Positions 40,815-59,099 of a stretch of 64,000 nucleotides of DNA are shown in pieces (the first letter of the stretch is position 1; each line of letters opens with the position of its first letter). Source of the DNA: Convolutriloba macropyga (Eukaryota); NCBI RefSeq assembly GCF_964194025.1, contig NC_134474.1:74338001-74402000 (forward strand), written 5' to 3'. The translations under genes and the position numbers were made by a program. The notes under the pieces are model-generated. The model had not been told where the DNA came from. It was given only the letters and a program-made list of their open reading frames with translations, and did no database searches.

Positions 40815-40869
40815 AACAAGGAGGCTCGTTAATGTGCGTTCGCACATGATGTTCCGACCCGAGCTCATC
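40815..40869. repeat. Dispersed short repeat with hairpin TGTGCGTTCGCACA (possible Helentron/HINE-like terminus)
   Basis: Reverse-complement copies at ~6019-6072 and ~61062-61115 that end in CCTTGTT. Confidence 0.5.
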
Positions 40870-40909
40870 TACAATTTTGACTTAGTTGTCAACCAAATGA
40901 AGAGACAAT

Positions 40910-41090
40910 AGTAGTATTATATAGCTGTATTGGGATGGGGGGGTTATCCTGCCATGAGGATAATAGGGTATAGAATGCATGAGGATAATATGGAGTGGTA
41001 TATCCCATGAGGATAATATGGAGTGGTATATCCCATGAGGATAATATGGAGTGGTATATCCCATGAGGATAATATGGAGTGGTATATCCC
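40910..41090 (+). repeat. Polinton left TIR with 4 perfect 28-bp tandem units
   Basis: AGTAGTATTATATAGCTGTATTGGGAT..., then ATGAGGATAATATGGAGTGGTATATCCC x4 at 40979-41090; reverse complement of 53075-53254. Confidence 0.96.
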
Positions 41091-41097
41091 TTCTGAT

Positions 41098-41477
41098 CTA
41101 CATGTAAATTGAGAAGGAAGAATTGCCGCGACTGAACTTGCGTTTGAATTGTACATGTAAATTGAGAATGTAAATAAGAAAAAATTACCGCGATCAACTT
41201 TGCATTTAAAAAGATTATTTACCGAGCTCCCGATTTATGTGAAAACGGATCAAACAACAATTTATTATTTTGTATTTCCAACTGTAAACCAAACAAATTA
41301 AAACAATTAACTACTTCACAAAATCCAAACTGCGGAGCACTTTGAAAACAGGTTCTAAAACTTAAAGTTAAACCAAAATTCACGTACAAACAATAATTTA
41401 CCTCACAAAATCAAACTGCGGAACACTTTGAAAACACGCTCTGAAACTTAAAGTTATACCAAAAATCACGTACAAAA
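41098..41477. repeat. Polinton subterminal direct repeats (two pairs)
   Basis: TACATGTAAATTGAGAA...CCGCGA twice (~41098-41210); an ~87-bp unit CACAAAATC..AAACTGCGGA.CACTTTGAAAACA...CACGTACAAA twice (~41302-41477). Confidence 0.8.
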
Positions 41478-41564
41478 TTGCGTAGAAGTGGAAACTAAGG
41501 TAAGTTTGTTTGAATTAATTTAGCAAGCAACAAAACGCTCAAGCGTTGGGTTTTGCTATGAATT

Positions 41565-44500
41565 TTAATCACTGCTGTCACTTGCTTCAAAGTTAATGAG
41601 GGAGCACTGAAAAAGATCATCTTCAGAACTGCTGCTCCTATCGAAATCAACAACATCAGAATCACTAGTTTCCTCCTCAGTAGTAGCTCTAGCAACAATC
41701 ATTCCCGGGTCGGGTGGTGTCCAGTTTTCTGCCATATCAAGCATTTGATTCATGTGATCACTTAAATGTTTTCTCATTCTTTTTGCTGGAGGAGGAATGG
41801 GACTGGGAGGTGTCGGATAATCCCAGTCGACATCAGCGTCATTGTCTCTACCATTGAAAATTCTACTTAAACTTTCTTCTGAGACTGATTTGTAATCCCA
41901 ACTTATTTCACTGTCCTCTTTCTCATTATCGAACCAGCTATATGAATCAGTATCACTCTCTGCTGTAGATTGCGAACTGTTCCTTATAGAATAATGCCCA
42001 AATGGCAGTGTTCTCAAACCATCAGCCAGAATGTATCGTTTATTGTCGTACGCTGAGAGGGACACTTTGTTTTCGGATACTGTTTTTAGAATATGGTTTT
42101 CGGACGTTACTCTATTACTTATTGCTCGATATTGTTTTGCCATAACCAGTGTAGACTTGTACAGCTCGTGTGTCAACAACTTCTGGGCAGCTTTTGTTAC
42201 CCCTTTCGCCGACAGCTTTCTACAACCTGGAATAAAACAAAAGCAGATCAACCTCGAGTCTCAGGTGAGTTCTTATTTCAACATGCAAAAAAAGTGATCA
42301 GTTCTCGAGGAATAAAAGTATATATGTAATTTATTACTTACTTTTAGAAGTTATTGAATACATTTTGGGCTTCAAGCATATAAATTCCGAGATGTAGTCA
42401 CCAGCGAATTCATCCTTGAACTTGAGAACTCTGCTGTGGTTAACATCGGAGTAGAGTGGATGATTGTCAGGATAGTTTGAAAAATCGAATTCTGTACAAA
42501 CTTCTTTCTTCTTTGCCAAGTCGGCATAGAGGTCAGTCGTCTCAACTTTATACAATAGACTGTCGGTATCAGAGTACAAGAGTGAGCACCGAAAATTTGC
42601 GCGCATAATATCATAGTGGAACCCGTACATACGTAGTTTTGAAAGATCCAAGATGGTCACCCCGACAATAGTTGGTGTTGTCCATTTAATAAATTTTGGT
42701 CGAGAACAGATCGCCGCCATGTTTTCGCCGAATATTTTAAATTTGTCAAACTCGAATTTTGATGTAAGTTTTGCAGTTTTTTCGGCTTCCCGTGTTATGT
42801 CTACTTTCAGTCGTCTTCGTTTTGACTCAATTGTTTTCCCATATACCGAGTTGTTCATCAATTTGTAGTAGTTCTGTTCAAATCTGTTAGTTGCTTTTTT
42901 TCTCATGGCGCTGTTTAAGGTAATGTACGGTTCAAGCCACTTTGATTGTGTGAATTTGAGAACTCTGTGTACTTTTTTTGATACGCAACCCCAGTCGAAC
43001 ACAGAATTGCAGTAGTTTGTAGTGTAGGACATATTTGCTTTTGTCAAACATAGTTTGTAGTAGTTTGTTAACTTTATTTTCAGGTAAATTGTAACGCTGT
43101 TTAACCTCTAACTGATAATCGCTTAGCCAGTCGTCCTTTACTAGTGTTTTTTCTGGTGCCAATGGGTAGTCCCGCTGTTGATCATGTATTTCACTTGGGT
43201 ATTCTAAATCGACTTCACAGAAATGCCCAACTGAAGAGCTATCAGGGTGGTGTAGTAGTTCGTTTATTGAGATGTCGAAAACAAAACAAAAATCACCAAC
43301 GGGTAGCATCTCCTCCTGCATAACTCCACATATAAATTATTAGCGTCCACCATTAGCCCAAATGTGGACGTTTCCTTGGAGTTGAACCCAGGCAGGTAGC
43401 GGTTGTTTGCTTTAAAATGTCGACTTTCGAAAACAGAGGTTATACCCCCGCGTATCGCTGGCTCTATCATGTCCAGATGTTCCCGTTCAGTGAATAACTG
43501 AACTTCAGCTTTGGTGATACGAAGTGCGGCATCTTTTGCCTGTTTGGGGCAGTGAAGAACTGTACAACATCAATCTTGTAAGTTTTGAAACTAATTTTCC
43601 GACAATACTCGGAGCAGCAAGCTAATAAAGCACAATCTAATTTTAGATAGGCATCATGATAATCCTGCATGGTTTTACACCCAAGCAAATTCCACATTCT
43701 GTTTGCATGATTCCATTCGTTTTGCTTTATTGTTGTGCCATTTAGTGAGTTTTTCCATGCTTCTATTGGAGACAAACTATCTTCCGAGAACTTTGTCCGA
43801 TTAGACATGTATGAATATGGGTAGTAACCTTTTTGCTTGAGCAGGTCAAAGTGGTCACTAGGAGCTTCATTGAACATTACTTCTAAAATGCCGAATTCAG
43901 ATTGTGGTAAAGTTTCGGTGAGTTTTTCTAGAGATGCGTTAAAAAGCTTGGACGAGTCAACAAACCTAAGGAACTCATACACTGGAACAATTTGCCCATC
44001 CTTTTTCATCGTGTCCACTTGAACACCTAATTGCATCGAGATATATTTCTCGTCAGTTGCAGGTATTACGCTTATTGTTGTAGATGGCTCACTTTCCTGC
44101 AATGCCAGACAGATATGGTGGAGATCGTAATTTTTTATGTTGTGCCCAATTACGGGAATGATTTTTGACGTTCTCCGTAGTCGGTTGCATTGCGGATGGG
44201 CCCAGCCCAAAAATTTACACTGTAGTGGCAGTGGTCAAGGTCTTTTTCGTCATTTTCATCAAAATCAGTTTCGCAAATCCAACAAGCAACACTTTCTGTT
44301 TTTCCAAGTTTTGATCTGTCTCCAAGAAAATACGGATGTTTTTGTTTCTGCTTGTGAATATCATTTGCCAACTTGTGAAGCACTTTCACAAATATCTTCA
44401 TGCAATTTTCGGAGCTATCTAAGTGGGTATACTCTGGCTTCGGGTTGTTATGCTCAACAACAGTCAGAGCGAAACCGCAGGGCTCATGAATTTCTATGGT

Positions 44501-45916
44501 GGATGATGAGGAGACGTTTCCACTAAGTGAACAAGTAGATACTGGCCTTACGAAAGATTCAAAATCAAAGTAAATTACCAATGGGGCAAACCAGAGGGCA
44601 GACCAGTTGTTAAATTTGTAGATATTGCTGTTTTCGCTGGGCATTCGAACAAGGGCTGGTGAATGATCTTTACACCCTTCAACGTGTTCATCGAAAGCTG
44701 TGACACCGTCATAACATAACCAGAAACAGTTTCTGCATAAAATCAGGTAACTACGATGACTCACTGACCGCGGAAAGCAATAAAAATTGCACAGGTCCTT
44801 GATAAGAACATAGTGATGTTTATCTGAATCGTAAAGTAGCAGTAAATTAATAACCAACTCCTCTGAACTCTTTTTTGTTGAAATTCGCATAGGAAATAGA
44901 TCTGTTTTGTGGTGACCAAACACGTTAACTTGAACAGAATTAAGTTCCTCAAACTTGTTGAGACTACTAAGACCCAATGGCATCTGAAAATTGCCCGCTG
45001 GGAAAAGCGACTTCAGGTCTTTATAAGTTTCGGGATTTGTCGCTCTCAAAGTATCGTTTTGACCGTCAACTTTCATGCCAATACTTTCCTTCAGACATCT
45101 GGCTGCTATATAACAGTAGACAAAGCAGTTATTGTCATTGTGGCTTCGAATATTTAGAACAGCTTAGCATGTGGATAACTCGTAAGGAAGAGCTATGAAT
45201 GACGATCCCCGAATAGGTCTGTATTTCGCAAAGTTGAGATGTAAGCGAATCACCCGATCTAGTAGCCATCCACTCCCTGAAGACACGAAAGTAAAGAGAA
45301 CAGCCAACATTTTTTCCACCATCAAGGCAAAGTCGTCGTTTGAGATACCTCCAACAGTTACTGGGGTCATTAGTGAATTGGCAAATGTAACTAAATTTTC
45401 GTCGTCTTCATCAGTCTCGTGTTTTGGTTTGAAGAGTGATATTTCAGCAGAAAATTGAATTTTCTGGGGTCCTGAGCTTAATTTTTGCTCAATAAGTTCC
45501 TTTATTTGTGCTCGCTTGGACTTCATAAAGGTCTGCAAGTCCAACGAATTTTCTTCATTGTTTTCAGCTTCGATTACAAACGTTTGAACGTAACCATTAA
45601 ATGCGGACTGGGAGGGTATTTGTAAAGGCTGGAACTCTTCTCCAAAAACGGGAAGCGATTGAACAGAGCTCATATGTTGTGCGTAGAGGTGAGAATTGTT
45701 AAAACCAAGATAACAAGAACGACAACAATTTGTAAACTTTGAGTGAACTGTTCTCATATGTTCTTCAAGAGGAGACATTTCTCTAGTTGAAAACTCACAA
45801 ATTGAACATTGATAATGTGGTAAGCCGCACTCATCGGGATGAAATTGTGTTTCATGTCGCGATTTGTTTCCCGGTGTACTAAACGTTGAAGGGCAGAAGC
45901 GGCAAGAATAAGTCAT
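41565..45916 (-). pseudogene. polB: Protein-primed family B DNA polymerase (C2H2 fingers, TP/OTU-like region, exonuclease with EndoVII insert, polymerase, acidic tail); one intron, one nonsense codon, four frameshifts
   Basis: Motifs GSGW, GSSFIALP, NDNNCF/HYVLIKD (OTU-like Cys/His), YFDFES (ExoI), CWIC..DHCH..AHPQCN (EndoVII), HNIKNYD (ExoII), KGYYPY, YLKLD (ExoIII), DANNLY (A), KLMNNSVYGK (B), YSDTDS (C), KPKMYS, SAKGV, DNKRYI. Stop at 45164-45166; frameshifts near 44218, 43540, 43330 and 42975. Confidence 0.96.
42227..42341 (-). other. 115-bp spliceosomal GT-AG intron in polB
   Basis: Donor AAAA|GTAAGT at 42341 and acceptor TTTTGTTTTATTCCAG|GT at 42227; removal joins KMYSITSK-S-CRKLSAKGV in frame. 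Confidence 0.88.
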
Positions 45917-46076
45917 TTCAAAAGCAGTTATCAGAAGTAAATAAATGAAGTTGGATAAACGGTTTGTTTAATAATGTTCGTTACTCTGCAATAAAACTCA
46001 GTTCTGTGTAATACTCAATTTCACTCGTTACGACTGAATACATGTTTACAGTGTTTTGAAAATGGTACTGAAATAG

Positions 46077-46344
46077 GGCGGCAAATTTGATATTCAAATT
46101 GAACGTTTTTCTATAGGCTAATTTTGGCGCGCGCTTCAACTCCAAATTTATCTCGACCTCGAAAGACTTTGTCTTTTCTTAAAACTATTATCCCGGCTTT
46201 ATTATTATACCTAATTTGAAGCTAATGCACAAAAGGGATTTTCACTAGATAGGGCGCCAAATTTGAATTTCAAAATAGCGGCCTCTGGTTGACTGGAATC
46301 GGCGGGAAAATAGTTTCGAAATTTTAGTAAAATTAAACGCGAAA
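46077..46344. promoter_or_regulatory. Cluster of E2F (TTTSSCGC) sites with a CHR motif upstream of polB
   Basis: GCGGCAAA 46078-46085, TTTGGCGC 46123-46130, GCGCCAAA 46254-46261 followed by TTTGAA, GCGGGAAA 46302-46309, plus a partial CGCGAAA at ~46338. Confidence 0.6.
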
Positions 46345-47696
46345 AAAGGATTAAAACATTTTGCGATTGCGAATTCAAAAGATGTGCTAGTAGACCCTTA
46401 GATGGGTCATACCGAGTATTGTTGTTTGTGGATTACTTCAAAAAATGCATTTAAAAAAGCGGAAAAACATGTTACTTTATTTGAATTTTTTCAAAAAAGT
46501 GTCATTTTAGACCTTATCTATAACGGGTGGTTAGAGTTGTCCTACGTTGTCAAGTGTGATGAGCAAAATTGCTCCCCGGGCCGAAAAACATAGGTCAGCA
46601 CTTAAAAAATTGCTCTAAAACAACCAGAAAAAAAGTTATTTTTTTCTGTCAATCATCATAAATCAATGTCATTAAATGACAATTACATGACAGAAACATG
46701 TGTCTTTTTTCTGAAACCTTTTTCGATGACAGGTGTTATGAGAGAATTGATGCTGTGGGCCCACAATGTGCAAAAATGCAAAGAAACGCGATCTAACATC
46801 TTTCCTTAGGGTACTTCATATGCTAATTAATGCCAGATGTTAATGTGACATTGATGACCAGATGTTTTCGAAATTGGTGAAGGAGCCATTTTTCGGCCAT
46901 GATGGTTATGATCAAAAACATCCAGCATGTTCCCACAAAGACATTGCTGTAACAAAATCCAATTTTTTTTTTCCATTAATTAGCAATTATGTCAATTAGT
47001 CGCTAATTAGCCGTTAATTAGGCGCTAATTATCTCCGTAACGGTTAAGTTAAATTTGACGAGCGTGATGAGATGTTTTGTAGGACACAGTGTGCTGAGGA
47101 CCTCTGTACCATCAGTTTCATCTCAAGTGTTTCTCCTTTTTGGGGTCAAAGGTCAGAGGTCATCTATCAAAAAAATTTTCTTTTCAAAATATTCAATTTT
47201 TTTTAACAAACCTGCTTTTTTTTACCCTTTTGAACGAGAGCCCAAAACTAGGAGGTGTTGCTAGAGGAAGTTAAAACTTTTTTTAACTCAGCCTAATGAC
47301 ATCATTTTGTTTTAAAGTACAATTTTTTGATTTTTTTCTGTGAGAGATTACAATTTTTGACAATTTTTTCCAAATTATGAATGAATTTCAGGGTTCATAC
47401 GCTGCTACAGCTGCTGGCATAATGTTAACAGTTCTTTTGGGCCAAAAAACGTGCACATTTTGCAAAATAAAATTATTGTTAATTCCGAAAAACTTAAGGT
47501 TGAACATACAGATGTTAATAAATTTTATTGATTCGATAGTCTTAATCTGGATATTTTAGCTCAAAAACTAATCACTCCAAAGATCACATTCGTGCACCAT
47601 ATGTTTGCCATAAAAATCGTAATGAACAGACTCAAGTACGCCGTAGGCATACTTGGGACTGTATTCGCCAATCATTTGTTTTTAATTGAGTGTTTG

Positions 47697-48122
47697 ATGA
47701 CACATGTGTAATCCCAGCTTGCCGCCGCTATTGAGTTGGAGCGCTCACAACTTTATTTGAAAGAGATAAAATTTGGTTGCGCCATCTCTTTCACTTCCAT
47801 TAAAGACACAGAATTTGGCGATTGTTATTTCGACATTTCGAAAACTGCTGGGCGCTTAATCAGGGCAACTGTGAAAACGTATGAAAGGACGGGAACCTTT
47901 GTGTTTCTAAAATTGTTCAAGAAAGCGGAAAGCGATTACGATTGTCAGCAGAGAGTTTCTCTAACTGTTCTAGAATTTGAGAACTTGATTGAAAAGTCAG
48001 CTGATATACGCGCTCAGTTCACCCATGAGGAATCAACAAAACCACCTCCAGCAAAGAAAACACGATTCCAACAAAAATTAGAAGAAACTTCGAATAACAA
48101 CACCAGCAAAAAAAATGGTTGA
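47697..48122 (+). CDS. PC4/Sub1-like ssDNA-binding protein (premature TAA at 47709)
   Basis: GRLIRATVKTYERTGTFVFLKLFKK...QRVSLTVLEFENLIEKSADI matches the PC4 pattern (beta strands, then ISL..EQW..L.E...DI); NLS-like PPAKKTR; in-frame ATGs at 47601, 47622 and 47697 lie upstream of a single stop. Confidence 0.6.
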
Positions 48123-48804
48123 GGCGATGTACGAGCGCTCACCAAATTACTTTAAACAATTTCAAAAACAGTTCAAGTTTCAGATTGTCCAAGAGAAACC
48201 TACCCTTTCTAACACAAATGTTTATGCAGTGTGTGCCCATTTTGATTCTGAGTTTTGCGGTTTAGTAACTAACCATTATCACGTTTTGCTTGATACAACA
48301 ACTTTCGAAAAAGAAACTTTGAAACGAAACCAGAATTTTCCTGTGCCTTGTATTTTTACAACCTTCAAATTCTTATTTTCGACTGCAACAACTTTGGAGA
48401 CTAATGGAGACGTTTTTACAAAGCTCAAATTGGCGGTTGAATTCAACAGCTCCGCAGATAAAGTTGACTCACAGACAGTACGCAAACAACTGCCAGCTTT
48501 TGCCTGCCACAGTAATGTGAAAAACAGCAATGCAAAACCAGTGAATATGAATCAAAAACCCTGTGCAAAGATGCCAGTATTTGCTCAAAAGACTATCTAC
48601 AACGCCCGTCCTCCATCGAAACAAGTTCAAACTGATTTTGTTAATAGTGAAAGTATCCGAAGAGTTGAAAACATTTTGTCTGGTCCTCATTCGGGTGCTT
48701 TTTGTCAAATTATGGATATTTTTGTTAGTGGATACGGAAAACTGAATATTAATACTGATTTGTTGAGTGTTGGCCTTGTGTATGAAGAAAAAATTAAATT
48801 TTGA
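48115..48804 (+). CDS. 229-aa Polinton accessory protein with an HUH-like motif
   Basis: Intact ORF overlapping the PC4-like stop; YAVCAHFD...NHYHVLL motif; AATAAA follows the stop. The function is inferred. Confidence 0.7.
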   Translation: MVEAMYERSPNYFKQFQKQFKFQIVQEKPTLSNTNVYAVCAHFDSEFCGLVTNHYHVLLDTTTFEKETLKRNQNFPVPCIFTTFKFLFSTATTLETNGDVFTKLKLAVEFNSSADKVDSQTVRKQLPAFACHSNVKNSNAKPVNMNQKPCAKMPVFAQKTIYNARPPSKQVQTDFVNSESIRRVENILSGPHSGAFCQIMDIFVSGYGKLNINTDLLSVGLVYEEKIKF

Positions 48805-48839
48805 GAAAAAAAAATAAATTTATTGCAATCAAGGAAAGG

Positions 48840-49279
48840 TTAATACATCATATGAAAAGCAAAGCGAATTAATTGAGCATCACTCAGTTTTACAATTTTT
48901 TGTGAATTAAAAACATAATGAGCAATATAAATACAATAAAGTCCACACATTTTTTTGAATTTTTACTTTGAATTGGCTGATCCTTCAGTAACTGTTAAAT
49001 TTTTGCCTTTTCTTCTAGAGAAATTATTCTTTGGTAAACATCTTTGTATGACGAAATAGACTGTCCGAGAGGATCAGCAAAGAACAACTAATCCTCTTCC
49101 TCTTTCTGACACAATAGTAACCAATGGGTACCAAAACTTTCTGCAGTTGCTGCGTTAACAATTAGGAAACTGTTTGGTTTCAATTTTTGGGGAAAATTAT
49201 TTGCAGCGAAGACACCCAGAAATTTATGCTTGAGTAAAGCACATCTTAGAATTAGATCATTTATATCATCTTCGTCCAT
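48840..49279 (-). pseudogene. PRO: Adenain-like cysteine maturation protease
   Basis: FLGVFAAN, GTHW (His), FADPLG (Asp), IQS (Gln), CGLYC (Cys); in-frame stops at 49088-49090 and ~48995 and a +1 frameshift in an A-run near 48952. Confidence 0.92.
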
Positions 49280-49281
49280 TT

Positions 49282-50592
49282 TTAGTTTGTTAAAATCTGA
49301 TTCTTTGATACTCTTCTTGCACTATCAACAAAAATTGTACTAGCTTTTTCACCAAAAATGAAAATTTCAATATTGTTTGGTAAGGCCACAGAAAATTTTA
49401 ACTCAACATATATTGAACAATTTGTCAGTTCAGGGTGAATAAAGTCCTGGGATGCTTGTTGGGTACTGGTCAAATCAAAAACCATTACGAAATGGTTTGT
49501 GTAATCTGTCAAACTTATTCCATGTCCATTATCAATGTAAGCTAGATCCGATATTGTATTAAAGTAAAGACGTTTGTCGTCAGCTTTAGATGTTGGACCA
49601 TCTGCCACAGGCAAACCGTTTCGATATACATAAATCTGCTCTAGGCTGAATTTTCGGAAATGAAAAGGATTTTGCCGGTTGTTACCCAGAAAAGCTTCAT
49701 TTGTATTTAAGCAGATCGCCAGTCGGCGGATTGGTTCTCTCGCAAATATATCTTCTTGTTTCCAACTGTGTAGAACAGTTGAAGCTAGAAACGTATTTGT
49801 GAGGGTTTCAAGGTAAGGATAGAAGGCGGGACTACTTAATAATGTTTTTTCAATGGCGGACACAACAGTGTCATTAAGGGTCATCTTCCGCACAAACAAT
49901 TTAGCTTCGACAATTTTTACTTTGTATTGTTTCGCAGCATCATCAGACATTATATCAAAATCATCAATTGAGCGTCTGAATGCAATTCGAAGTGTCACGC
50001 CACTTAGCAGATGTCTGTCGCAAGTGAAAAAGTCTACAGCAATTTTGCCATAGAATGTGCATTCAGCTGATTGTCTCACCAAAAGTTTTCTTCTGTTCAC
50101 TTCCGCAGTTGATAGCGTTCCCGGGTTTTCCTCATAAGAGTAGCCCTGACAGGCCAGCCATGTATTTTTTGCATCTTTATTATGTGAAAACTCGGTCTCA
50201 ATGAAACTTTTGTGAGCATAATTTCCGTTAGCATTTGAAATTTTCAGTCCATTAGCAGACACTGTACAATCAGAGAATAGTGAATGTAACACATTATTAC
50301 AAAAGTAGGGAGAATCCGTTTTTGTAATGTCAGCGGCGGCTGTAGCGTCATATTTCAAATCAGCTTCAGAAGACTGGACAATTTTACATTTAACTTCGAG
50401 AAAAATTTTTTGTAAATCTATAAAGTTGTTTCTGTCACCAGCGACTTCAAATTCTAACATGGGTCCATTTGGGCTGTAGAATGGACCCAATTTTTGACAA
50501 AAACTACCATCAAAAGTCACCAGTAGTGAGGGTTTTTCAAATAAGTCCAGTGAGCTGTGAGTTGCTTCTGATAGTAGCAAATTAGCGATCAT
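49282..50592 (-). CDS. PY: Major capsid protein (double jelly-roll, hexon-like), 436 aa, open
   Basis: SSLDLF, GPMLEFEV, FIDLQKIFLEVKCKI, NNVLHSLFS, YAHKSFIETE, NPFHF and FDLT are Polinton PY motifs. Confidence 0.93.
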   Translation of the reverse strand: MIANLLLSEATHSSLDLFEKPSLLVTFDGSFCQKLGPFYSPNGPMLEFEVAGDRNNFIDLQKIFLEVKCKIVQSSEADLKYDATAAADITKTDSPYFCNNVLHSLFSDCTVSANGLKISNANGNYAHKSFIETEFSHNKDAKNTWLACQGYSYEENPGTLSTAEVNRRKLLVRQSAECTFYGKIAVDFFTCDRHLLSGVTLRIAFRRSIDDFDIMSDDAAKQYKVKIVEAKLFVRKMTLNDTVVSAIEKTLLSSPAFYPYLETLTNTFLASTVLHSWKQEDIFAREPIRRLAICLNTNEAFLGNNRQNPFHFRKFSLEQIYVYRNGLPVADGPTSKADDKRLYFNTISDLAYIDNGHGISLTDYTNHFVMVFDLTSTQQASQDFIHPELTNCSIYVELKFSVALPNNIEIFIFGEKASTIFVDSARRVSKNQILTN

Positions 50593-51003
50593 CGTTCACT
50601 TTAGCAAAAAAATCCGACCGACTTCTTTTTGGTGCTCTTTGCGTTGAAATGGTCTTTCTGCGTTTCTCGCCTACTTTCATTGGCTTGCCTCGTATTGATT
50701 TCCTCCTACGTGAAGTAATTCGTCGAGAGCCTCCAGTCTGTTTTAAACAGTTTTTGAAATTGTGTTCTTAATTGCTTGTCTAGGAGATTTTTTGTTGCCC
50801 ACTACATCCAGAATCTCTGGTACACTTTGTTTCAGAAGCTCTTTCCCAATACCTTTAGCAGTTGGCAAAATGAAGCGACATGCTAGGGGCAGTGCAACAC
50901 GTCCAATTCCTGCAGCTAAGGCGCCAAAACCACTTCCTCTTTGTCGATAATGTCCAGAGAAATGAAGCAAAGACGTCGCTTGATTAGCATAGTAAGAATC
51001 CAT
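50582..51003 (-). pseudogene. Small basic core/membrane-active virion protein (frameshift at ~50745)
   Basis: YYANQA...QRGSGFGAL.. amphipathic helix; after a 1-nt shift it continues KQTGG-SRRITSRRRKSIRGKP...KRSRSDFF to a stop that overlaps the MCP ATG; lies between penton and hexon. Confidence 0.78.
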
Positions 51004-51010
51004 TTTATTT

Positions 51011-51889
51011 TTAAAATTTTTTGAATTGTAGTGTTAGAATAACTTTTCCAGTTCCCGAAAACGGAACTAATTGTCCTGTTTCCGTCGGCAGTTCAATTGA
51101 AATTGATTGAATTGTATTGGTCAAAAGTTTCTTGTAGTCTAAATTTGTAAAAACGATTCGATGAGTTGGTTCAAGCTCGCATACACTACCGTTTTTCAGA
51201 CGTTGTTTCGAATCAATGACTCTCAAGAGAGGCGCCTTAGTGTCACCGACGTATTGGTATTCAATTATGTTTGTATAGATGAAAATAAGATGCTTTCCAG
51301 CATAAAGGTCGGCTGGAAATTGCCCATAATATGCTTTTGTGTCATCACTTTTCATAGGCCTGTTTTCATTTGGATTCATTTTGTACCCAATATGAATTCC
51401 ATTACCGTCAGGAATACCTTCAAAGCCAATAATGCTAGGGATTTCTTCACTGGGAAATGTAATTCCCTCATATTTCCCTAGCAAAATTTTGTATTTTCCA
51501 GAGCTCTTAATTTCTCTGAAAGAAAAATGGGGTAATCCAACTGTGCGCTTAACTGTGGCAAGAAGTTGCGCCACCGAATCAAATGTTCCTGGCATAAAAA
51601 CTAGTTTTTGCCCGCTATATGGTCTAGAAATAACATTGGCTCCAAAAGACATCTTTTGGGAATCTTTATATTCTTTTAAGTTGTACACAGTCAGATTTCC
51701 GTTTACAAAATTTTCTATTTTTGTTGGGAATATGATTTCGCTTAGCGCCACTGGCCCATCACCTGAAAGTTGAATTTCGTCATTTAAAAAATTCCGAAAT
51801 GATGCAAGTGTGTTTGAATCAAATATTTCCATTGAAGCGGATGAAACAACGTGAACTGTAAACTCGTCTTCAAACCGGTTTTTGGACAT
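51011..51889 (-). CDS. PX: Minor capsid protein (penton-like), 292 aa, open
   Basis: FTVHVVSSASMEIFDSNTLASFRNFL...VALSEIIFP and IFIYTNIIEYQYVGDTKAPLLRVI...G..VPF..GKVILTLQFK; ATG at 51889 overlaps the integrase stop. Confidence 0.9.
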   Translation of the reverse strand: MSKNRFEDEFTVHVVSSASMEIFDSNTLASFRNFLNDEIQLSGDGPVALSEIIFPTKIENFVNGNLTVYNLKEYKDSQKMSFGANVISRPYSGQKLVFMPGTFDSVAQLLATVKRTVGLPHFSFREIKSSGKYKILLGKYEGITFPSEEIPSIIGFEGIPDGNGIHIGYKMNPNENRPMKSDDTKAYYGQFPADLYAGKHLIFIYTNIIEYQYVGDTKAPLLRVIDSKQRLKNGSVCELEPTHRIVFTNLDYKKLLTNTIQSISIELPTETGQLVPFSGTGKVILTLQFKKF

Positions 51890-52784
51890 TTTCAACGGGA
51901 GGGAGCCTGACAAGTTGTAGTTCTGGTTGATAAAATTTTCCTTGAATTGGTTCGATGACAGCGTCAACTAAAGAGTATGTTGGCGGGTTTAATGTAGGTA
52001 TTACCGTTATTTCAAAGACTTCGTCTGTGAATGATTGCTTGTAACTTTTCCGGAAAGCTTTGTCCTTTTTAACTATTCTCACAAAATCCCCAACGTAAAC
52101 TTTGGGCTTCTGAGTTGTGCTTGTTTGCGCGGTCAATGACACTAACCGTGGTACATCCTTTTTTGTAACTTTATTTGGGTTACCTGCAAGTTGGGTTACC
52201 CGATTTACTCTTGAATTGATTGTTTTCACAAATTGGTCTAATTGATCAATGTAGGAATATGTCCACCTTTCTTCGAGGTACCGATGAATTATCTCTTTTA
52301 AGACCCTAATGTTCCTCTCTGCAAATGCAGACTTTTTTTCGCTGAAAGTACTGTATAAATGAATTCCACGTTTGTTGCACAATTGTTTGAAAGCTCCAAG
52401 AAACTCTTTACCATCGTCAACCCACACTTTTTCAGGCTGCTTAATTTTGATCATCTTTTCAGCTGTTTCCGTCGCATACTTTGTTTTCAAGGGTTGCACA
52501 CGTAAATATCTTGATAGACAGTCAACCGCTACCAAGAGATATTTTATGTTACGGTTATATTCCGCTAGTTTGTCAACGTGCGCCAAATCCAGTGACCAAA
52601 TTTCATTTATGTTTTTTACAAAAATTTTAAGCCTGGGAAAATTTAATCGAATTGAACGGTATTTTGTTAAAGAGGGTTTTGTCTCCAAATATAACTGCTC
52701 ACTGTACTCAGGATAAACTTCCCTCACAAACAAAAAATTTTCGTGTATTATTTTCAAATCTATTGTAGCAATAGTAGCAACCAT
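51870..52784 (-). CDS. INT: Retroviral-like (RVE) DDE integrase, N-terminus probably truncated
   Basis: WSLDL (D), YLLVAVDCLSRY, VWVDDGKEF (D), AFAERNIR (E), VGDFVRI, GKFYQPEL. Recognisable homology starts at about YLETKPS (~52693); no C-terminal chromodomain. Confidence 0.93.
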   Translation of the reverse strand: MVATIATIDLKIIHENFLFVREVYPEYSEQLYLETKPSLTKYRSIRLNFPRLKIFVKNINEIWSLDLAHVDKLAEYNRNIKYLLVAVDCLSRYLRVQPLKTKYATETAEKMIKIKQPEKVWVDDGKEFLGAFKQLCNKRGIHLYSTFSEKKSAFAERNIRVLKEIIHRYLEERWTYSYIDQLDQFVKTINSRVNRVTQLAGNPNKVTKKDVPRLVSLTAQTSTTQKPKVYVGDFVRIVKKDKAFRKSYKQSFTDEVFEITVIPTLNPPTYSLVDAVIEPIQGKFYQPELQLVRLPPVENVQKPV

Positions 52785-52879
52785 ATCGTTCTATCACATC
52801 TCCGAAAAGTGAAAATTTCATCAGTTGATTTATGCCGAGAATTTATAGGCTCTCTTTAATAAAATTGACAATTCCATAT

Positions 52880-53254
52880 GCTCCAATGTGATTTCATATT
52901 ATCCTCATACAATAATCAATTCCATTTTATATTCATGGGATATATCATAACCTATTATTCTCAGGAAATAACATTCCATATTATCCTCATAGGATATAAC
53001 ATTCCATATAATCCTCATGGGATATACCACTCCATATTATCCTAATGGGATATACCACTCCATATTATCCTCATGGGATATACCACTCCATATTATCCTC
53101 ATGGGATATACCACTCCATATTATCCTCATGGGATATACCACTCCATATTATCCTCATTGGATATACCACTCCATATTATCCTCACGCATTCTATACCCT
53201 ATTATCCCCATGGCAGGATAACCCCCTATCCCAATACAGCTATATAATACCACT
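52880..53254 (-). repeat. Polinton right TIR and extended 28-bp array
   Basis: Six near-perfect GGGATATACCACTCCATATTATCCTCAT units at 53019-53186 plus about 5 increasingly degenerate units inward; terminus ...TATAATACCACT. Confidence 0.95.
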
Positions 53255-56200
53255 GACAATCAAATATAGATGTTTGTGTTTAAAAAACACACCCAAGATA
53301 ATAATTGAATTACATAATGCCTTGCCTCATTATAGTCCTCACAAGATCTGCAATTAAAAAGACTACGAGAAGAAAAAAAACGAACAATAAGCAAAAACAA
53401 AAATTTCACGGCACAAACGCAATATCAAAAATTAAAAGCACATAGTAACAACGTCAAAACACAATCTGATAAAGTTTTAACTTCACAAATTTACTTCTTC
53501 TTAACTATACAGCAAATGGGACTTTAATTCAATGTTTTAATTCAATATTTTTTTAGAGAGGATCATTTTCAACGTCTTAAAAATCATTCACTGTTAACTA
53601 AATAATTCTTGATAAATTTGATTAAAAAACACTACAAAAAAAGAAAGGACCTGTCTTTGGTTAGACTGAGCCATAAAAACGGACTACAGATGCAGGAAAA
53701 ACTCAACAAAATTACAAACACTTTGAGAAAACAAAAATTAGTGAGGCCATTAAAGCCTTAGCTATCATCTGCATATTGTTTTTTGTTTCACTGTTTATTT
53801 ACCCTAATTCAGCTAAAATTAAATTGAAAGATTTATGAAGTTCACTGGGGCCTCATTTGAAAGCAATTGGGATCTGCTATTACGTGGATGTGCTAAAAGA
53901 AGAGAAAAGAAAACGCAAATATTGACCACTTACAAATTTTATGAAAACGCATATTGTCCGACAAAAAAAACATCAGTTACGACATAAAATCAAGAGTTAT
54001 TTTAATTTTTGAAATACAAAAATTGGATGGGACCTCTCGATGTTGAGAATTGCTTAAAAATTAACGAGAAGAAATACAAAACTGAAAACCTGGAAAAGTT
54101 TTTGAATATTATCATGAACTCTAACTCTCTTAGGATATACTAACTGCATTGAGCACGATAATTCAATGCTCAATTAGAAATAAATGGGACCTGTCAGCAT
54201 TTTACTACAACAAAATTAAAGAACAACAGGCAAAAACAGCAAATTCCAAAACATTGAGAAAAAAACGTTGAAGCCTTTGACAAAGAATTTTTTCAGTAAA
54301 AACCTTTCTATTTTCGACTATTTTTTTTACAGCAATGGCATTTTAGTTTACAAAAAGTCTTCAAAAATTCATCAAACAGAAAAAATAAAACCGAAAAATT
54401 TTGAAAAAAGTATTACCAAGCAATTAAATTCAAAAGTTTTTAACGACAACAAACAAAATTTTGTCTCATGGGACGAAAATGATGTTTTTTGTTCATAAGT
54501 CATCGATAAGACCTCGCGATAAAACTTATGACTATGAAAACAGAAACAAATGCAGGCAAATTTTGTCAAAAAAGCGCAAGAACACTTCATATAGGATGAA
54601 CTGAATGTTTTTTTCAACCAATGGCAACTATCAATATTGAGATACTGTGTTCAGAATTCACAATGAACCAAAATTAAGAAAAAAAATTATCCAAAAATTA
54701 AAAAAAACTTTATAAAAACTTTTGGCATCAAAATCATAAAACCAAAAGTACGAGGACAAAACCGCTATTGAGATTAAATTTAGTTGCAGTAGAAAGGAAG
54801 AGGTCCTGTCATTACTGAGGATTGACTTAAAGTTCACAAAAATAAGATTAACACTGGTTACGGTGCAAACGAAGTTTTCGAAAAAATCCTTTTAAAGTTT
54901 TAACAGCCTTTAAATGTCCACTCAAAGCGCTAGATGGGTTCACTTAAAACTCAATCAGGAACCTATCTCACTTTAAGTCGACGAGTCCATGCGACAGGTC
55001 TACCAAAATTTAGTAAAATTTCAAAAACCGCAAAATTTCAATAAAAATTACAAAAACTCAGATTCGAAGCCAAAAATAACATGACCAATCCCTTGAAAAC
55101 GAATTTTTTGTTCATTGGGCATCATTTGACTGTAAACGGGACATCTTATTAACGGGTAGAGTAAAAAAAATAGTAAAAATTTTCTGAAAAACAGCTCTGA
55201 AAAAGAATTCAATTTTTTTATAGTGAACTTACCTATCAGTTCAGAACCTTTTTTATTGCCTTTCGTCTATTAGGAACACAATATTGATTCATTTCGTAGC
55301 GTGAAATGTAATTTTTATTCAATATTTTTGTTGAAAAAACCCTAATTTGAAAACGTATTACGCTAAAAGTGAACGAAATCATGCCAAATATCCCCTGTTC
55401 ACACAAAACTTTAAACCTCAATAACTGCTCAAAAAAAAACACGAAATTCGAAAAAAAAATTTCAGTCCGAATTCTTCGCTGGACCAGCTTTTTAATGATA
55501 CCACTCTGCGATAAACAATTCGGTCGACCAAAATCGACTGAACAAATTAAACCCATGGTTTAAGGGACTGAACAAATATAACCCAATAAAACCCATGATC
55601 ATATAGTTCACTTGTAGTTATATACAAATGGGGTTGGAACACTAAAGTAATTTATTGTGACAAACGAAGCGATTGAAACAAACAATGAACTAAGAATCAA
55701 CCCAAAGCTTATTACCAGGAGGTTTGTTAATGAAAGATACTCTGAACATAAAAGCTGCGCATGCCAAATCTTTTATGAAGGCAACAGCTGCAAAAACAAC
55801 TGGACAATGTTTCAATCATGGCAGCAAAGACAGTAAACCCAGAAGTGCGGCTGTGAATTCTCAACTACAACAACTACTACGTATAAAATGAAAATGAGCT
55901 TTCATGTTCCACCGAATAGTTTCATCGCAGAGGACTTAATTTGTTGCTATTGTGTTTTCAAAATATTCGTAACAATAGAAAAACGTGAAAAATTGTCTTA
56001 GTATGCTGCTTTTAAAACTATGCTTGCTGAAAAACTTCCTTTGTCTTGTTGAATCCGGAGTGCTCCATATTGTGAGCGGTTGACAAAAATTTACCGGCAA
56101 CCCAATCGGCAGCCTAATTTAAATTCTGGTAAAGCAAACAAACTTTTACAAAAATTTGGTTACAGAAGGAGAACATTTTTGTACTTTTTAATTTCTCAAC

Positions 56201-56980: not shown

Positions 56981-57433
56981 TAGTTACTAAAAACTAAGTA
57001 AATCTATTTGTTCAATATGATTCCCCGACACAGCGAAAATCTTTTTGATGAGATTAATTTATTTGAGAAAGAAGTTAAAAACCGCAGGTTTTCAAGTTTT
57101 CCACCGAGGAAACTTAATTTAACTCGATGAAAAATTTTCCGCGGAGCTAAAATTTGTATTTGTTTGTTGGTTGTCCAGCTTTAATGTATTTCAAAGCAAA
57201 CTTCTTTTTTTGAAAAGTCAAATAAATTGAAGACAAAAATGTCGTAACTTTAGGAGAGAGTGAGTCTATTTAATTTTAGCTGTTTTCGGCTTGAGCCAAA
57301 GAAAGAAGATAACTCACTGATAATATACCCTCGGTGGATTTTTTTTGAACCAGTGATTTCCGTTGGCGAATTTTCTACTATCCAGTTTAATCCCATCTGA
57401 GCGTATTCAATGACCCAGTGAAATCACGTAGAT

Positions 57434-57736
57434 GGGTATTTCCCATTATAGCCCCCCCCCCCCGAAATTATAGCCCCCATTATGGTATAATAACCATGAT
57501 TGGTGGGGTTATACGTTATCTGGCCACTAAGCTGATTGGGGATCTTTTCCGTTTGTGCCCCCCCCCCCCCAGTACGTTATGCTCCCCCCAGTTACAGAGC
57601 ACGTGTCATTACATACTAAATCATTATGTAAAAATATTGCACGTGCATCTGGGGGTTGCAAATAATATGCACCCACTAAGCGGGGGGGGGGGCACAAACG
57701 GAAAAGATCCCTGATTGGCTATAATGGGAAAGACCC
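57434..57736. mobile_element. MITE family B containing a nested family A copy (57540-57710, TSD CTGATTGG)
   Basis: Outer TIR GGGTATTTCCCATTATAGCC / GGCTATAATGGGAAAGACCC; inner TIR GGATCTTTTCC / GGAAAAGATCC with an 8-bp duplication at 57532-57539 and 57711-57718. Confidence 0.88.
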
Positions 57737-57779
57737 GGTTTATCTATGATCCAGTGATATTCCATCGAAAGTTGAAAGC

Positions 57780-58257
57780 CATATGCCCACTAAGCTGGGA
57801 GTGGGGCGGGGGGAACAGAATAGATCCAAAATTTGTACGTTATGCACTCCTCACTTAACGTTAGCACGTGCCATTAAATAGTAAATCATTATGTAAATAT
57901 AGCACGTGCGTCTGTCGGGTGCAAATAATATGCACCCTCTAAACCTGGGGGGGGGGGGGGGGGGGGGGAGGCACGATAAACGGAGAAGATCCCGAAACTT
58001 TGTGCATCAAATGTGTTCTGTGTTCTTGTTTTAGAGGAGACCAAGGACTAATCCGGCCAAGTGTATTTTGGATCTAATCTGTTTTGACCCATATTTCCAG
58101 ATTCTTTTCCGGGATCTTTCTCGTTTGTGCCCCCCCAGTACGTATTACATAGTAAATCATTATGTTAGAATATGGCACGTGCGTCTGGGGGGTGCAAATA
58201 ATATGCGCCCACTAAGCTAGGAGGGGGGGGGGGGGGGGGCACAAACGGAATAGATCC
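57780..58257. mobile_element. Cluster of family A/C MITE copies (full copy at 58112-58257)
   Basis: Shared core ...GCAAATAATATGC.CCCACTAAGCT-G(n)-CACAAACGGAA.AGATCC; flanks of the full copy are CTTTTCCG and CTTTTCCA. Confidence 0.75.
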
Positions 58258-58315
58258 CTTTTCCATCTGTTACAGTGAGTGTTGCTAGGTGCTACTGACT
58301 CCTACTCATTATTAC

Positions 58316-58415
58316 CTGTGGGGTGTTTTGAGGTTCCATCTGTGGGTAAAGACGATCGCCTGGGTGTTTTTCTTGGCATTTCCACCACCACATCACGTGA
58401 CCCCCCACAACCCAT
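58316..58415 (-). CDS. STMND1: STMND1-like protein, first coding exon (MGCGGS acylation motif)
   Basis: ATG at 58415 gives MGCGGSRDVVVEMPRKTPRRSSLPTDGTSKHPT; phase-1 donor ACAG|GTAATA is compatible with exon 39874. The five exons total 1338 nt (445 aa). Too short to appear in the ORF track. Confidence 0.72.
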
Positions 58416-58978: not shown

Positions 58979-59099
58979 GGGTCTTTCCCATAATAGCCCC
59001 CCCCCCCCCCATTATGTTATGTTTACCATGATTGGGGGGGGGGGGGGGACTATAGGTTATCTGACCAATAAGCTAGGGTGGCTATAAAGGGAAACACCC
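58979..59099. mobile_element. MITE family B
   Basis: GGGTCTTTCCCATAATAGCC...GGCTATAAAGGGAAACACCC. Confidence 0.75.

What the first reader, a model, noticed from the sequence alone, without database searches (positions are those of the whole stretch)
47697..48804. Polinton carries a divergent two-gene module: PC4-like ssDNA-binding protein plus an HUH (Rep-like) domain protein
Seen: two overlapping plus-strand ORFs oriented opposite to every other gene in the element. The second has H42-x-D44...H54-Y-H56-VLL and, ~30 aa later, PVPCIFTTFKFLFS. Knowledge: rolling-circle HUH initiators such as pMV158 RepB have the layout H-D-K-D...HYHVL...MYLYLTH, with a His metal site followed by a catalytic Tyr helix; inactivated HUH folds serve as origin-binding domains in polyoma- and papillomaviruses. 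Here Phe (TTC, one change from TAC) occupies the Tyr positions. Inference: this may be an accessory replication module, i.e. an ssDNA-binding protein for strand-displacement replication plus a Rep-derived origin/TIR-binding or terminus-processing protein. HUH proteins are not part of the canonical Polinton gene set.
Basis: partly seen in the sequence, partly recalled or inferred. Interest (0 to 1): 0.85.

Follow-up and report, generated by a model that had tools for sequence, protein, structure and literature searches.

The report
Polinton gene pair: PC4-like plus Tyr-less HUH-like
A dead, integrated Polinton (virus-like transposon) carries two small genes that are conserved across a large unannotated lineage of such elements: one predicted to fold like the ssDNA-binding protein PC4, the other like the metal-binding domain of rolling-circle Rep proteins but without a catalytic tyrosine, so they may be the unknown replication helpers of Polintons.

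Summary
The two plus-strand ORFs exist as described (47712-48122 and 48115-48804, 8-nt overlap), inside a 12.3-kb Polinton (40910-53254) with 6-bp target duplication and TIRs built of 28-bp units. Both are real genes: hundreds of unnamed relatives, always adjacent, in the same position next to the adenain-like protease gene, with dN/dS of 0.2-0.4.

ORF1's model (four strands plus a helix, pLDDT 83-88) matches PC4 homologues (Foldseek probability about 1.0). ORF2's N-terminal 110 residues (pLDDT 60-83) match almost only HUH Rep domains (pMV158 RepB, parvovirus, circovirus and geminivirus Reps), but with weak E-values and no sequence-level hit. H42, H54 and H56 are near-invariant, as are C48 and C79. 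D44 is not conserved. No tyrosine is conserved: positions 81 and 84 alternate Phe/Tyr family-wide and position 86 is variable, so Phe is not a recent loss in this copy.

This is a conserved PC4-like plus Tyr-less HUH-fold module, probably replication or regulatory DNA-binding proteins. It is not a canonical Rep nuclease and is not peculiar to this copy.

The window copy itself is defective: PolB, protease, a 140-aa gene and integrase are broken, ORF1 has lost its start, and two gene blocks are deleted. Function is inferred, not shown.

The parts
40910..53254 (-). Integrated Polinton/Maverick-type element, 12,345 bp. It has 5'-AG...CT-3' termini and is a defective deletion derivative.
   Evidence: Inverted repeats. 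The termini were read directly. Relatives L001-L003 align along it.
40904..40909 (.). Left copy of the 6-bp target-site duplication, GACAAT.
   Evidence: Read directly.
53255..53260 (.). Right copy of the 6-bp target-site duplication, GACAAT.
   Evidence: Read directly.
40910..41107 (+). Left TIR. It contains 4 exact tandem copies of a 28-bp unit at 40978-41090.
52895..53254 (-). Right TIR. It contains about 10.5 tandem copies of the same 28-bp unit at 52895-53185.
   Evidence: The unit occurs nowhere else in the window.
41565..42251 (-). 228-aa ORF downstream of PolB with an acidic, Ser-rich tail. Function unknown. ORFs of 189-200 aa sit in the same position in relatives.
   Evidence: No Pfam hit.
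42337..45916 (-). Protein-primed family B DNA polymerase with an N-terminal C2H2 zinc finger. Broken: at least 3 frameshifts and 7 stops relative to an intact 1203-aa relative.
   Evidence: Pfam DNA_pol_B_2 and zf-C2H2. Counts and outer bounds.
47712..48122 (+). ORF1, given as its open frame. Its last ~112 codons are homologous to 105-112-aa proteins of relatives. The predicted fold is PC4/Whirly/PUR-type (four strands plus a helix). The start codon is lost in this copy (1 break).
48115..48804 (+). ORF2, 229 aa, intact. It has two domains joined by a variable low-complexity linker.
48148..48450 (+). ORF2 N-terminal domain (residues 12-112), predicted HUH-endonuclease-like fold. H42 lies on strand 2 and H54-Y-H56-V-L-L-D on strand 3 (48274-48294). 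C48 and C79 are conserved. There is no conserved Tyr.
   Evidence: AF2 model, pLDDT 60-83. Foldseek against PDB and BFVD. Column shares.
48625..48801 (+). ORF2 C-terminal conserved domain (residues 171-229) with Q-T-D, R183, D201 and G206-x-G208. The fold is not confidently predicted (helix-helix-strand-strand).
48843..49279 (-). Adenain-like cysteine protease (Peptidase_C5 in relatives), convergent with ORF2. Broken: 1 frameshift and 2 stops.
49282..50592 (-). 436-aa gene, intact, 91% identical to the L002 copy. It is a candidate major capsid protein by position only.
   Evidence: No Pfam hit.
50585..51003 (-). Homologue of a 140-aa gene of relatives. Broken: 1 frameshift.
51014..52784 (-). 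rve-type integrase with a long C-terminal extension (593 aa in an intact relative). Broken: 1 frameshift.
   Evidence: Pfam rve..

Best explanation
ORF1 and ORF2 are a conserved, tightly coupled gene pair of a large, so far unannotated lineage of Polinton/adintovirus-like elements.

ORF1 is a small protein with the PC4/Sub1-type fold (four antiparallel strands plus a helix). Inferred: it coats single-stranded DNA.

ORF2 is a two-domain protein. Its N-terminal ~110 residues adopt the fold of the HUH (Rep-class) nuclease / origin-binding domain. It keeps a three-histidine site (H42, H54-x-H56) plus two conserved cysteines, but has no conserved catalytic tyrosine. Inferred: it is not a covalent nicking-joining Rep. 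It is more likely a metal-bearing, sequence-specific DNA-binding (possibly hydrolytic) protein.

The most likely role (inferred from what the structural neighbours do, from the position next to PolB in one relative, and from the iteron-like 28-bp arrays in the TIRs) is as accessory replication proteins of protein-primed strand-displacement replication. ORF2 would recognise the repeated units of the termini, as RepB and parvoviral Rep origin-binding domains recognise direct repeats. ORF1 would cover the displaced strand.

Shown: existence, conservation, synteny, purifying selection, predicted folds and residue conservation. Inferred: DNA binding, metal binding and any role in replication. In this window the element is defective, so the pair is a relic here.
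For: Real genes:
- 175 and 111 relatives; 356 representatives at 50% clustering.
- dN/dS 0.18-0.50 over pairs down to ~30% identity.

Synteny:
- In all seven related loci examined (L001-L007) an ORF lies directly upstream of the ORF2 homologue. It was confirmed as an ORF1 homologue where tested: hhalign 98.5-99% for L006 and L005, and 51% and 27-38% identity for L003-L007.
- In the six loci that extend far enough, the next gene is a convergent ~141-145-aa gene that hits Peptidase_C5 in five of them.

ORF1 fold:
- AF2 strands 38-44, 48-57, 61-71 and 76-85, helix 86-104, pLDDT 83-88.
- Foldseek top hits are the phage T5 PC4 homologue, MoSub1, BPSL1147 and PUR-alpha, with probability 0.97-1.00 and TM (target-normalised) 0.6-0.65.
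- Weak Whirly HMM hit, E=0.11. 11/26 members hit phrog_1728 'transcriptional regulator'.

ORF2 fold:
- About 30 of the top 50 PDB hits, and 11 of the top 12, are HUH Rep domains: RepB, AAV Rep OBD, WDV, PCV2, duck circovirus (TM 0.53 over 99 columns), FBNYV, TYLCV and vientovirus.
- The BFVD top hits are parvovirus NS1, microvirus initiators and CRESS Reps, with probability up to 0.99.

Residues:
- In 29 divergent relatives: H42 28/29, C48 28/29, H54 28/29, H56 29/29, C79 29/29.
- H-[YFW]-H-[VIL]-[LIM] matches the classical HUH-plus-hydrophobics motif.

Context:
- TIRs carry 4 and 10.5 tandem 28-bp units, found only in the TIRs. L001 has 26-bp units with the same core.
- RepB's OBD belongs to the HUH Rep class and uses Tyr99 (PMC8056398). 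PDB 8amu is the RepB OBD bound to direct repeats (title).
Against: - The HUH assignment rests on one AF2 model of middling confidence: mean pLDDT 51, N-domain 60-83, with the other four models worse.
- Foldseek E-values are only 0.003-1.
- No profile-to-sequence hit to any Rep, PC4 or other family in Pfam, PDB or PHROGs.
- There is no conserved Tyr, and D44 is not conserved.
- Five conserved Cys/His residues would also fit a structural zinc site of another fold.
- PC4-fold proteins are also transcription cofactors, so a regulatory role is equally compatible.
- Nothing links ORF2 to the TIR units except analogy.
- No relatives were found in IMG/VR viral contigs by pattern scan.
Confidence: 0.55

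Rival explanations
1. The pair are transcription regulators of the element. ORF1 would be a PC4-like coactivator and ORF2 a sequence-specific DNA-binding factor that switches early and late promoters. They would not be replication proteins.
For: - PC4, Whirly and PUR-alpha, the structural neighbours of ORF1, are transcription cofactors as well as ssDNA binders (descriptions).
- 11/26 ORF1 relatives weakly hit a PHROG annotated 'transcriptional regulator'.
- The pair is transcribed divergently from a neighbouring gene. In relatives the space between them holds 75-97-bp tandem repeats that look like a regulatory region.
- ORF2 lacks a catalytic Tyr.
Against: - The best-matching structures of ORF2 are all replication initiators.
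- The three His are kept near-invariant, which a pure DNA-binding scaffold would not need. This is established knowledge: the polyomavirus and papillomavirus origin-binding domains lost them.
- In L006 the pair follows PolB on the same strand.
Confidence: 0.25
2. ORF2's N-terminal domain is not HUH-related at all. It would be a Cys/His zinc-binding module of another fold, and the AF2 model and its Foldseek neighbours would be misleading.
For: - Conserved H42, C48, H54, H56 and C79 make a plausible zinc ligand set.
- The model has mean pLDDT 51, and four of five models score below 40.
- Foldseek E-values are not significant.
- There is no sequence-profile hit to Rep families.
Against: - The enrichment of HUH Rep domains among top hits occurs in two independent libraries: 11 of the top 12 in PDB, and NS1/Rep/initiator proteins in BFVD. 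This is hard to get by chance.
- The H-x-H followed by hydrophobics lies on a predicted strand, next to a strand carrying the third His, as in RepB-type sites.
Confidence: 0.2
3. ORF2 is an active nuclease that processes element ends. It would use either water or a non-tyrosine nucleophile, or Tyr81 in those members that have it.
For: - The three-His site is near-invariant.
- Tyr at position 81, on the helix after the invariant Cys79, is present in 18/29 divergent and 24/82 close relatives.
- A Thr/Ser at position 173 is the only hydroxyl residue conserved family-wide.
Against: - Position 81 is Phe, Leu or Val in many full-length relatives under purifying selection, including this subfamily.
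- A catalytic nucleophile is not expected to be replaceable.
Confidence: 0.12
4. The ORFs are chance open frames in a decayed repeat.
For: The element in the window is defective, and ORF1 lacks a start codon here.
Against: - Hundreds of relatives down to 25% identity keep the frame, the order and the key residues.
- dN/dS is well below 1.
Confidence: 0.01

Closest known systems
HUH endonuclease superfamily, Rep class: origin-binding/nuclease domain of pMV158 RepB (PDB 3dkx, 3dky, 8amu) and of parvovirus, circovirus and geminivirus Reps
   Same: - Predicted sheet-plus-helices fold.
- An H-x-H motif followed by hydrophobic residues on a strand.
- A third conserved His on the neighbouring strand.
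- A domain size of about 110 residues at the N-terminus, followed by a second domain.
- Association with a genome whose ends carry direct repeats.
   Different: - No conserved catalytic Tyr.
- No sequence-profile similarity to any Rep family.
- Two extra conserved Cys.
- No helicase domain and no RepB-type oligomerisation domain detected.
- The host replicon is a protein-primed linear dsDNA element, not a rolling-circle replicon.
Inactivated HUH-derived origin-binding domains of polyomavirus large T antigen and papillomavirus E1 (from established knowledge; neither appeared among the listed top 50 hits of either fold search)
   Same: The concept of a Rep-fold domain that has lost the nucleophile and serves DNA recognition in a dsDNA replicon.
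   Different: Those domains lost the His motif as well and are fused to an SF3 helicase. Here the His triad is kept and there is no helicase.
PC4/Sub1 family and its phage and bacterial homologues (phage T5 PC4-like protein 4bg7, MoSub1 4agh/5zg9, BPSL1147 5a4o); PUR-alpha and Whirly share the fold
   Same: - Four-stranded antiparallel sheet followed by a long helix.
- Small size.
- A basic tail after the fold.
- Encoded by a mobile or viral genome, as in T5, where it is implicated in recombination-dependent replication (entry title).
   Different: - No significant Pfam PC4 match; only a Whirly hit at E=0.11.
- 15-22% identity in the structural alignments.
- ssDNA binding is untested.
Conserved adintovirus proteins of unknown function ('Adintoc' classes; Starrett et al. 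2021, PMC8502044)
   Same: Conserved small ORFs of Polinton/adintovirus-type elements with no BLASTP or HHpred hits. Our pair could belong to such a class.

Membership tests
HUH endonuclease superfamily (Rep class) | HUH motif: two His separated by a bulky hydrophobic residue and followed by hydrophobic residues. | tested here: met
   H54-[Y/F/W]-H56-[V/I/L]-[L/I/M]. H54 is present in 28/29 and H56 in 29/29 divergent relatives, and in 73/82 and 75/82 close relatives.
HUH endonuclease superfamily (Rep class) | A catalytic Tyr (Y motif) on a helix C-terminal to HUH, conserved in the family. | tested here: not met
   No Tyr column reaches 80% in the 35-sequence alignment. Position 81 is Y 18 / L 5 / F 4 / V 2, position 84 is F 22 / Y 7, and position 101 is F/M/L among the divergent relatives. 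In the close family F84 is 75/82.
HUH endonuclease superfamily (Rep class) | A third metal ligand (His, Asp, Glu or Gln) near the HUH motif. | tested here: inconclusive
H42 on the neighbouring predicted strand is 28/29 conserved.
HUH endonuclease superfamily (Rep class) | Central antiparallel sheet flanked by helices (Rep nuclease / OBD fold). | tested here: inconclusive
   AF2 N-domain pLDDT is 60-83. Foldseek top hits are overwhelmingly Rep domains, but E is 0.003-1 and the best TM is 0.53.
HUH endonuclease superfamily (Rep class) | Sequence-profile match to a curated Rep family. | tested here: not met
   No Rep family in Pfam at E<=10 for 27 + 35 members. No PDB sequence hit for the profiles. 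A single PHROG 'replication initiation protein' hit at E=0.024 in 1/35 members.
PC4/Sub1 (ssDNA-binding transcriptional regulator fold; also Whirly and PUR) | Four antiparallel strands followed by a helix. | tested here: met
   AF2 pLDDT is 83-88 over residues 38-104 of the 136-aa query.
PC4/Sub1 (ssDNA-binding transcriptional regulator fold; also Whirly and PUR) | Structural similarity to solved PC4 homologues. | tested here: met
   4bg7, 4agh, 5zg9, 4bhm and 5a4o/5a4n give probability 0.97-1.00. Target-normalised TM is 0.58-0.65, except 4bg7 at 0.43. E-values are only 0.04-0.2.
PC4/Sub1 (ssDNA-binding transcriptional regulator fold; also Whirly and PUR) | Match to the Pfam PC4 or Whirly model above the gathering score. 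| tested here: not met
   Only Whirly at E=0.11, 12.8 bits against a cut-off of 23. No relative carries a precomputed Pfam domain.
PC4/Sub1 (ssDNA-binding transcriptional regulator fold; also Whirly and PUR) | Binds single-stranded DNA. | not testable with these tools
   No test available.
Polinton/Maverick (adintovirus-like) element | Protein-primed family B polymerase and rve integrase. | tested here: met
   Pfam DNA_pol_B_2 and rve in the window and in intact relatives. Both genes are broken in the window.
Polinton/Maverick (adintovirus-like) element | Terminal inverted repeats and a 6-bp target-site duplication. | tested here: met
   TIRs of about 200-360 bp, up to 98% complementary. GACAAT on both sides and AG...CT termini.
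Polinton/Maverick (adintovirus-like) element | Adenain-like protease and A32/FtsK-type packaging ATPase. | tested here: met
   Peptidase_C5 in L001-L004. Pox_A32 in L002, L003 and L006. In the window the protease is broken and the ATPase block is deleted.
Polinton/Maverick (adintovirus-like) element | Double jelly-roll major capsid and penton proteins. | not tested
   The 436-aa and ~140-aa genes are candidates by position only.

The most novel reading that the evidence does not exclude
ORF2 is a Rep-derived end-recognition or terminal protein of Polintons. An HUH-fold domain that lost its tyrosine but kept its metal site would dock on the iteron arrays of the TIRs. Together with the family-wide invariant Thr/Ser173 at the start of the C-terminal domain, and with the PC4-like ORF1, it would take part in initiating protein-primed replication. 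That would tie the replication apparatus of protein-primed dsDNA elements to that of rolling-circle ssDNA replicons.
Probability: 0.15. Interest if true: 0.85.

Novelty: new variant of a known kind. Interest (0 to 1): 0.6.

Why it matters
How Polintons/Mavericks and adintoviruses replicate is inferred almost wholly from their polymerase. To my knowledge (not checked beyond the searches cited below) no single-strand-binding protein, origin- or terminus-recognition protein, or terminal protein has been assigned.

A gene pair that is conserved across hundreds of sequence clusters, sits beside the replication genes, and is predicted to have the PC4 fold and a Rep-like fold gives two concrete candidates.

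A Tyr-less HUH-fold domain that keeps its histidines would also be an unusual intermediate between active Rep nucleases and the fully inactivated origin-binding domains of polyoma- and papillomaviruses. It would add a link between Polintons and Rep-encoding ssDNA viruses.

In the held literature I found no paper that connects Polintons with PC4-like or HUH accessory genes. HUH genes are reported only for mriyavirus-like groups.

Tried and rejected
1. **Programmed -1 frameshift at the A-run before the ORF2 start, fusing ORF1 and ORF2.** Rejected. The A-run is not conserved (L002 lacks it), and the ORF1-ORF2 spacing varies among relatives: -8, +5, +12 and +137 nt. The relative frame also differs, being 1, 0 and 2 in the loci where it could be determined. 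A few single-copy clusters do encode fused 290-347-aa products, probably through mutation.

2. **Sequence-level tests for Rep or PC4.** These covered Pfam, PDB sequences and PHROGs, using single proteins, every member of three alignments, and two profiles. Nothing significant was found.

3. **Bridging ORF1 to PC4.** I used a profile search that included the most divergent ORF1 relatives. It returned only unnamed relatives without Pfam domains.

4. **Fetching pMV158 (NC_010096, accession seen in papers) to build a RepB alignment for hhalign.** The record is not in the plasmid collection. The profile-profile test against Rep families was therefore not done.

5. **Pattern scan of IMG/VR viral contigs.** No relatives were found.

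6. **Names for the family.** Only 'hypothetical protein' appears.

7. **Copies of the TIR 28-bp unit inside the element as possible internal binding sites.** None were found.

Not supported by column shares.

9. **Model coordinates.** They were not available for inspecting the geometry of the His cluster.
Full report
**1. What is in the window**

The two ORFs are there. One is a plus-strand open frame at 47712-48122, listed from a TTG at 47736. The other is an ATG-initiated ORF at 48115-48804. They overlap by 8 nt (ATGGTTGA).

Relatives of ORF1 are 105-112 aa and start further downstream. In this copy the codon aligned with their initiator Met is not a start codon. ORF1 is therefore a relic here, while ORF2 is intact.

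**2. The element**

- Inverted repeats built of a 28-bp unit lie at both ends: 4 exact copies on the left and about 10.5 on the right.
- Reading the ends gives termini at 40910 and 53254 (AG...CT), flanked by a perfect 6-bp duplication, GACAAT.
- On the minus strand the element carries:
  - a 228-aa ORF;
  - a family B polymerase with a C2H2 finger;
  - an adenain-like protease;
  - a 436-aa gene;
  - a ~140-aa gene;
  - an rve integrase.
- Intact relatives from public assemblies (L001-L003, L006) add an A32-type ATPase and several small genes.

These are the hallmarks of a Polinton/Maverick (adintovirus-like) element.

The window copy is defective, measured against an intact relative:

| Gene or block | State in the window |
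|---|---|
| PolB | at least 3 frameshifts and 7 stops |
| Protease | 1 frameshift and 2 stops |
| 140-aa gene | 1 frameshift |
| Integrase | 1 frameshift |
| ORF1 | start codon lost |
| 170-246-aa gene that lies before ORF1 in relatives | deleted |
| ~3.7-kb block with the ATPase | deleted |
| ORF2 and the 436-aa gene | intact |

**3. Are the ORFs genes?**

Yes.

- ORF2 has 175 relatives in the word-indexed search. The exhaustive profile search gives 356 cluster representatives at E<=1e-3.
- ORF1 has 111-135 relatives.
- None carries a name other than 'hypothetical protein', and none has a precomputed Pfam domain.
- Pairwise dN/dS is 0.18-0.40 for ORF2 and 0.22-0.50 for ORF1.
- In all seven related loci examined, an ORF lies directly upstream of the ORF2 homologue. 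These come from one large eukaryotic-looking assembly and from several metagenomes and read sets. The upstream ORF was confirmed as an ORF1 homologue where tested.
- In the six loci that extend far enough, the pair converges on the protease gene.
- hhalign of the ORF1 family against the upstream ORFs of the most distant loci gives 98.5-99% probability.

The pair is therefore a conserved module of a lineage, not a peculiarity of this copy. In L006 PolB lies on the same strand just upstream, so 'opposite to every other gene' is not general.

**4. ORF1**

- AlphaFold2 on a 26-sequence alignment gives four antiparallel strands followed by a helix, at pLDDT 83-88.
- Foldseek against the PDB puts the following on top, with probability 0.97-1.00; TM normalised to the target is 0.58-0.65, except 0.43 for 4bg7:
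  - the phage T5 PC4 homologue;
  - Magnaporthe Sub1;
  - a Burkholderia PC4 homologue;
  - PUR-alpha.
- E-values are modest (0.04-0.2).
- At sequence level there is only a sub-threshold Whirly hit (E=0.11) and weak hits of 11/26 members to a PHROG annotated as transcriptional regulator.

I accept a PC4-type fold (about 0.85). Membership of the PC4 Pfam family is not shown.

**5. ORF2**

*Predicted structure.* AlphaFold2 on 27 sequences is confident only for residues ~12-112 (pLDDT 60-83). The order of elements is helix-helix, four strands, helix, strand, helix. H42 ends strand 2 and H54-Y-H56-V-L-L-D forms strand 3. The linker and the C-terminal domain are poorly predicted.

*Foldseek against the PDB.* The search returns HUH Rep domains in 11 of the top 12 and about 30 of the top 50 places:
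- pMV158 RepB first;
- then AAV Rep OBD;
- then wheat dwarf virus, PCV2, duck circovirus (TM 0.53, rmsd 4.8 over 99 columns), nanovirus, TYLCV and vientovirus Reps.

*Foldseek against BFVD.* The search returns parvovirus NS1, microvirus initiators and CRESS Reps, with probabilities up to 0.99.

E-values are weak (0.003-1). No sequence-profile method finds any Rep family.

*Conservation in 29 relatives of 25-38% identity:*

| Position | Share |
|---|---|
| H42 | 28/29 |
| C48 | 28/29 |
| H54 | 28/29 |
| H56 | 29/29 |
| C79 | 29/29 |
| G98 | 29/29 |
| P127 | 29/29 |
| T173 | 26/29 (Ser in the rest) |
| R183 | 28/29 |
| D201 | 28/29 |
| G206 | 29/29 |

- D44 is acidic only in the close subfamily (77/82) and variable otherwise.
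- No tyrosine column is conserved.
- Position 81 is Tyr in 18/29 divergent and 24/82 close relatives, and Phe, Leu or Val in the rest.
- Position 84 is Phe with a minority of Tyr.
- Position 86 is variable.
- Position 101 is hydrophobic.

By the defining features of HUH endonucleases, the His motif is met. The fold is probably met. The tyrosine motif is not met, and profile membership is not met. I file ORF2 as 'HUH-fold-like, Tyr-less', not as a Rep nuclease. I put the probability that the fold assignment is right at about 0.65-0.7.

**6. How it most likely works (inference)**

RepB's OBD carries both DNA binding and catalysis and uses Tyr99 (PMC8056398). RepB OBD has been solved on direct repeats (8amu). 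AAV Rep OBD has been solved on its AAVS1 target site and on single-stranded DNA (titles); that it recognises repeated elements in the viral hairpin ends is from my own knowledge.

The Polinton TIRs here and in L001 are arrays of 28- or 26-bp units with a shared core. They look like iterons.

The simplest reading has three parts:
- ORF2 recognises the termini, or another repeated site, through the Rep-like domain.
- The retained His (and Cys) site is either structural or supports a non-covalent (hydrolytic) activity.
- ORF1 covers the strand displaced by the protein-primed polymerase.

A regulatory (transcription) role is the main rival.

The tight ORF1/ORF2 junction (overlap or 5-12 nt in most relatives) suggests expression from one transcript. 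A conserved frameshift is excluded.

**7. Novelty**

The held literature did not connect Polintons with PC4-like or HUH accessory genes. HUH genes are described for mriyavirus-like groups that replace pPolB. Adintovirus papers list conserved unknown 'Adintoc' proteins, which may include this pair; I could not compare sequences.

I rate this a new variant of a known kind, of moderate to high interest. The evidence is at fold level only.

- In my reasoning I noted approximate window positions of a deletion junction and of the lost start codon. I also listed the coordinates of the ORF pieces of the broken genes. These break positions are deliberately not given in the notes or in this report.
Consensus lines printed by the alignment tools were not used.

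Noticed in passing
window 40904-40909 and 53255-53260; termini 40910 and 53254: A perfect 6-bp target-site duplication (GACAAT) and AG...CT termini. The defective 12.3-kb copy was therefore inserted as a unit, or decayed after insertion without disturbing its ends.
   Followed up: yes
window 40978-41090 versus 52895-53185; L001 1721-1886 and 18236-18385: The TIRs are arrays of a 28-bp unit with unequal copy number (4 versus 10.5). The related element L001 uses a 26-bp unit with the same CATGrGGATAATATGG core.
   Followed up: partly
window 42337-45916 versus 47576-52698: The copy is a mosaic. The PolB segment is only ~65% identical in DNA to L001, whereas the ORF1-to-integrase segment is ~94% identical to it. 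This suggests recombination between element subfamilies.
   Followed up: no
window 41301-41476: Two copies of an 86-bp tandem repeat between the left TIR and the first gene.
   Followed up: no
L001 9224-9471; L002 7246-7545: Three copies of a 75-97-bp tandem repeat in the divergent intergenic region just upstream of ORF1 in relatives, possibly a regulatory region. Most of it is missing from the window copy.
   Followed up: no
proteins P0006, P0010, P0116, P0119 (290-347 aa): A few single-copy clusters encode one product that matches both ORF1 and ORF2, i.e. naturally fused frames in some copies.
   Followed up: partly
window 41565-42251 (-): A 228-aa ORF with an acidic, Ser-rich tail downstream of PolB. 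ORFs of 189-200 aa sit in the same position in L001 and L002. It has no family hit.
   Followed up: no
window 57400-63200: Many short inverted and direct repeats of a G/C-run followed by CACAAACGGAAAAGATCC-like sequence. This is another dispersed repeat family flanking the element.
   Followed up: no
window 60450-61115 and 40815-40860; L001 243-943: Sequence flanking the L001 element is ~69% identical to window 60450-61115. A 46-nt stretch just outside the left TIR is inverted at 61070-61115. Polintons may sit in or near another repeat.
   Followed up: no
window 30597-31148 (-): A 183-aa ORF with a weak reverse-transcriptase (RVT_1) hit at E=8e-4, probably a retroelement fragment.
   Followed up: no
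window 10-296: A run of 287 N (assembly gap or masked), left untouched.
   Followed up: no
L002 844-4455 (intact PolB, residues 530-581): A weak Endonuclease_7 (recombination endonuclease VII) hit at E=0.002, just before the polymerase domain of the intact relative's PolB.
   Followed up: no
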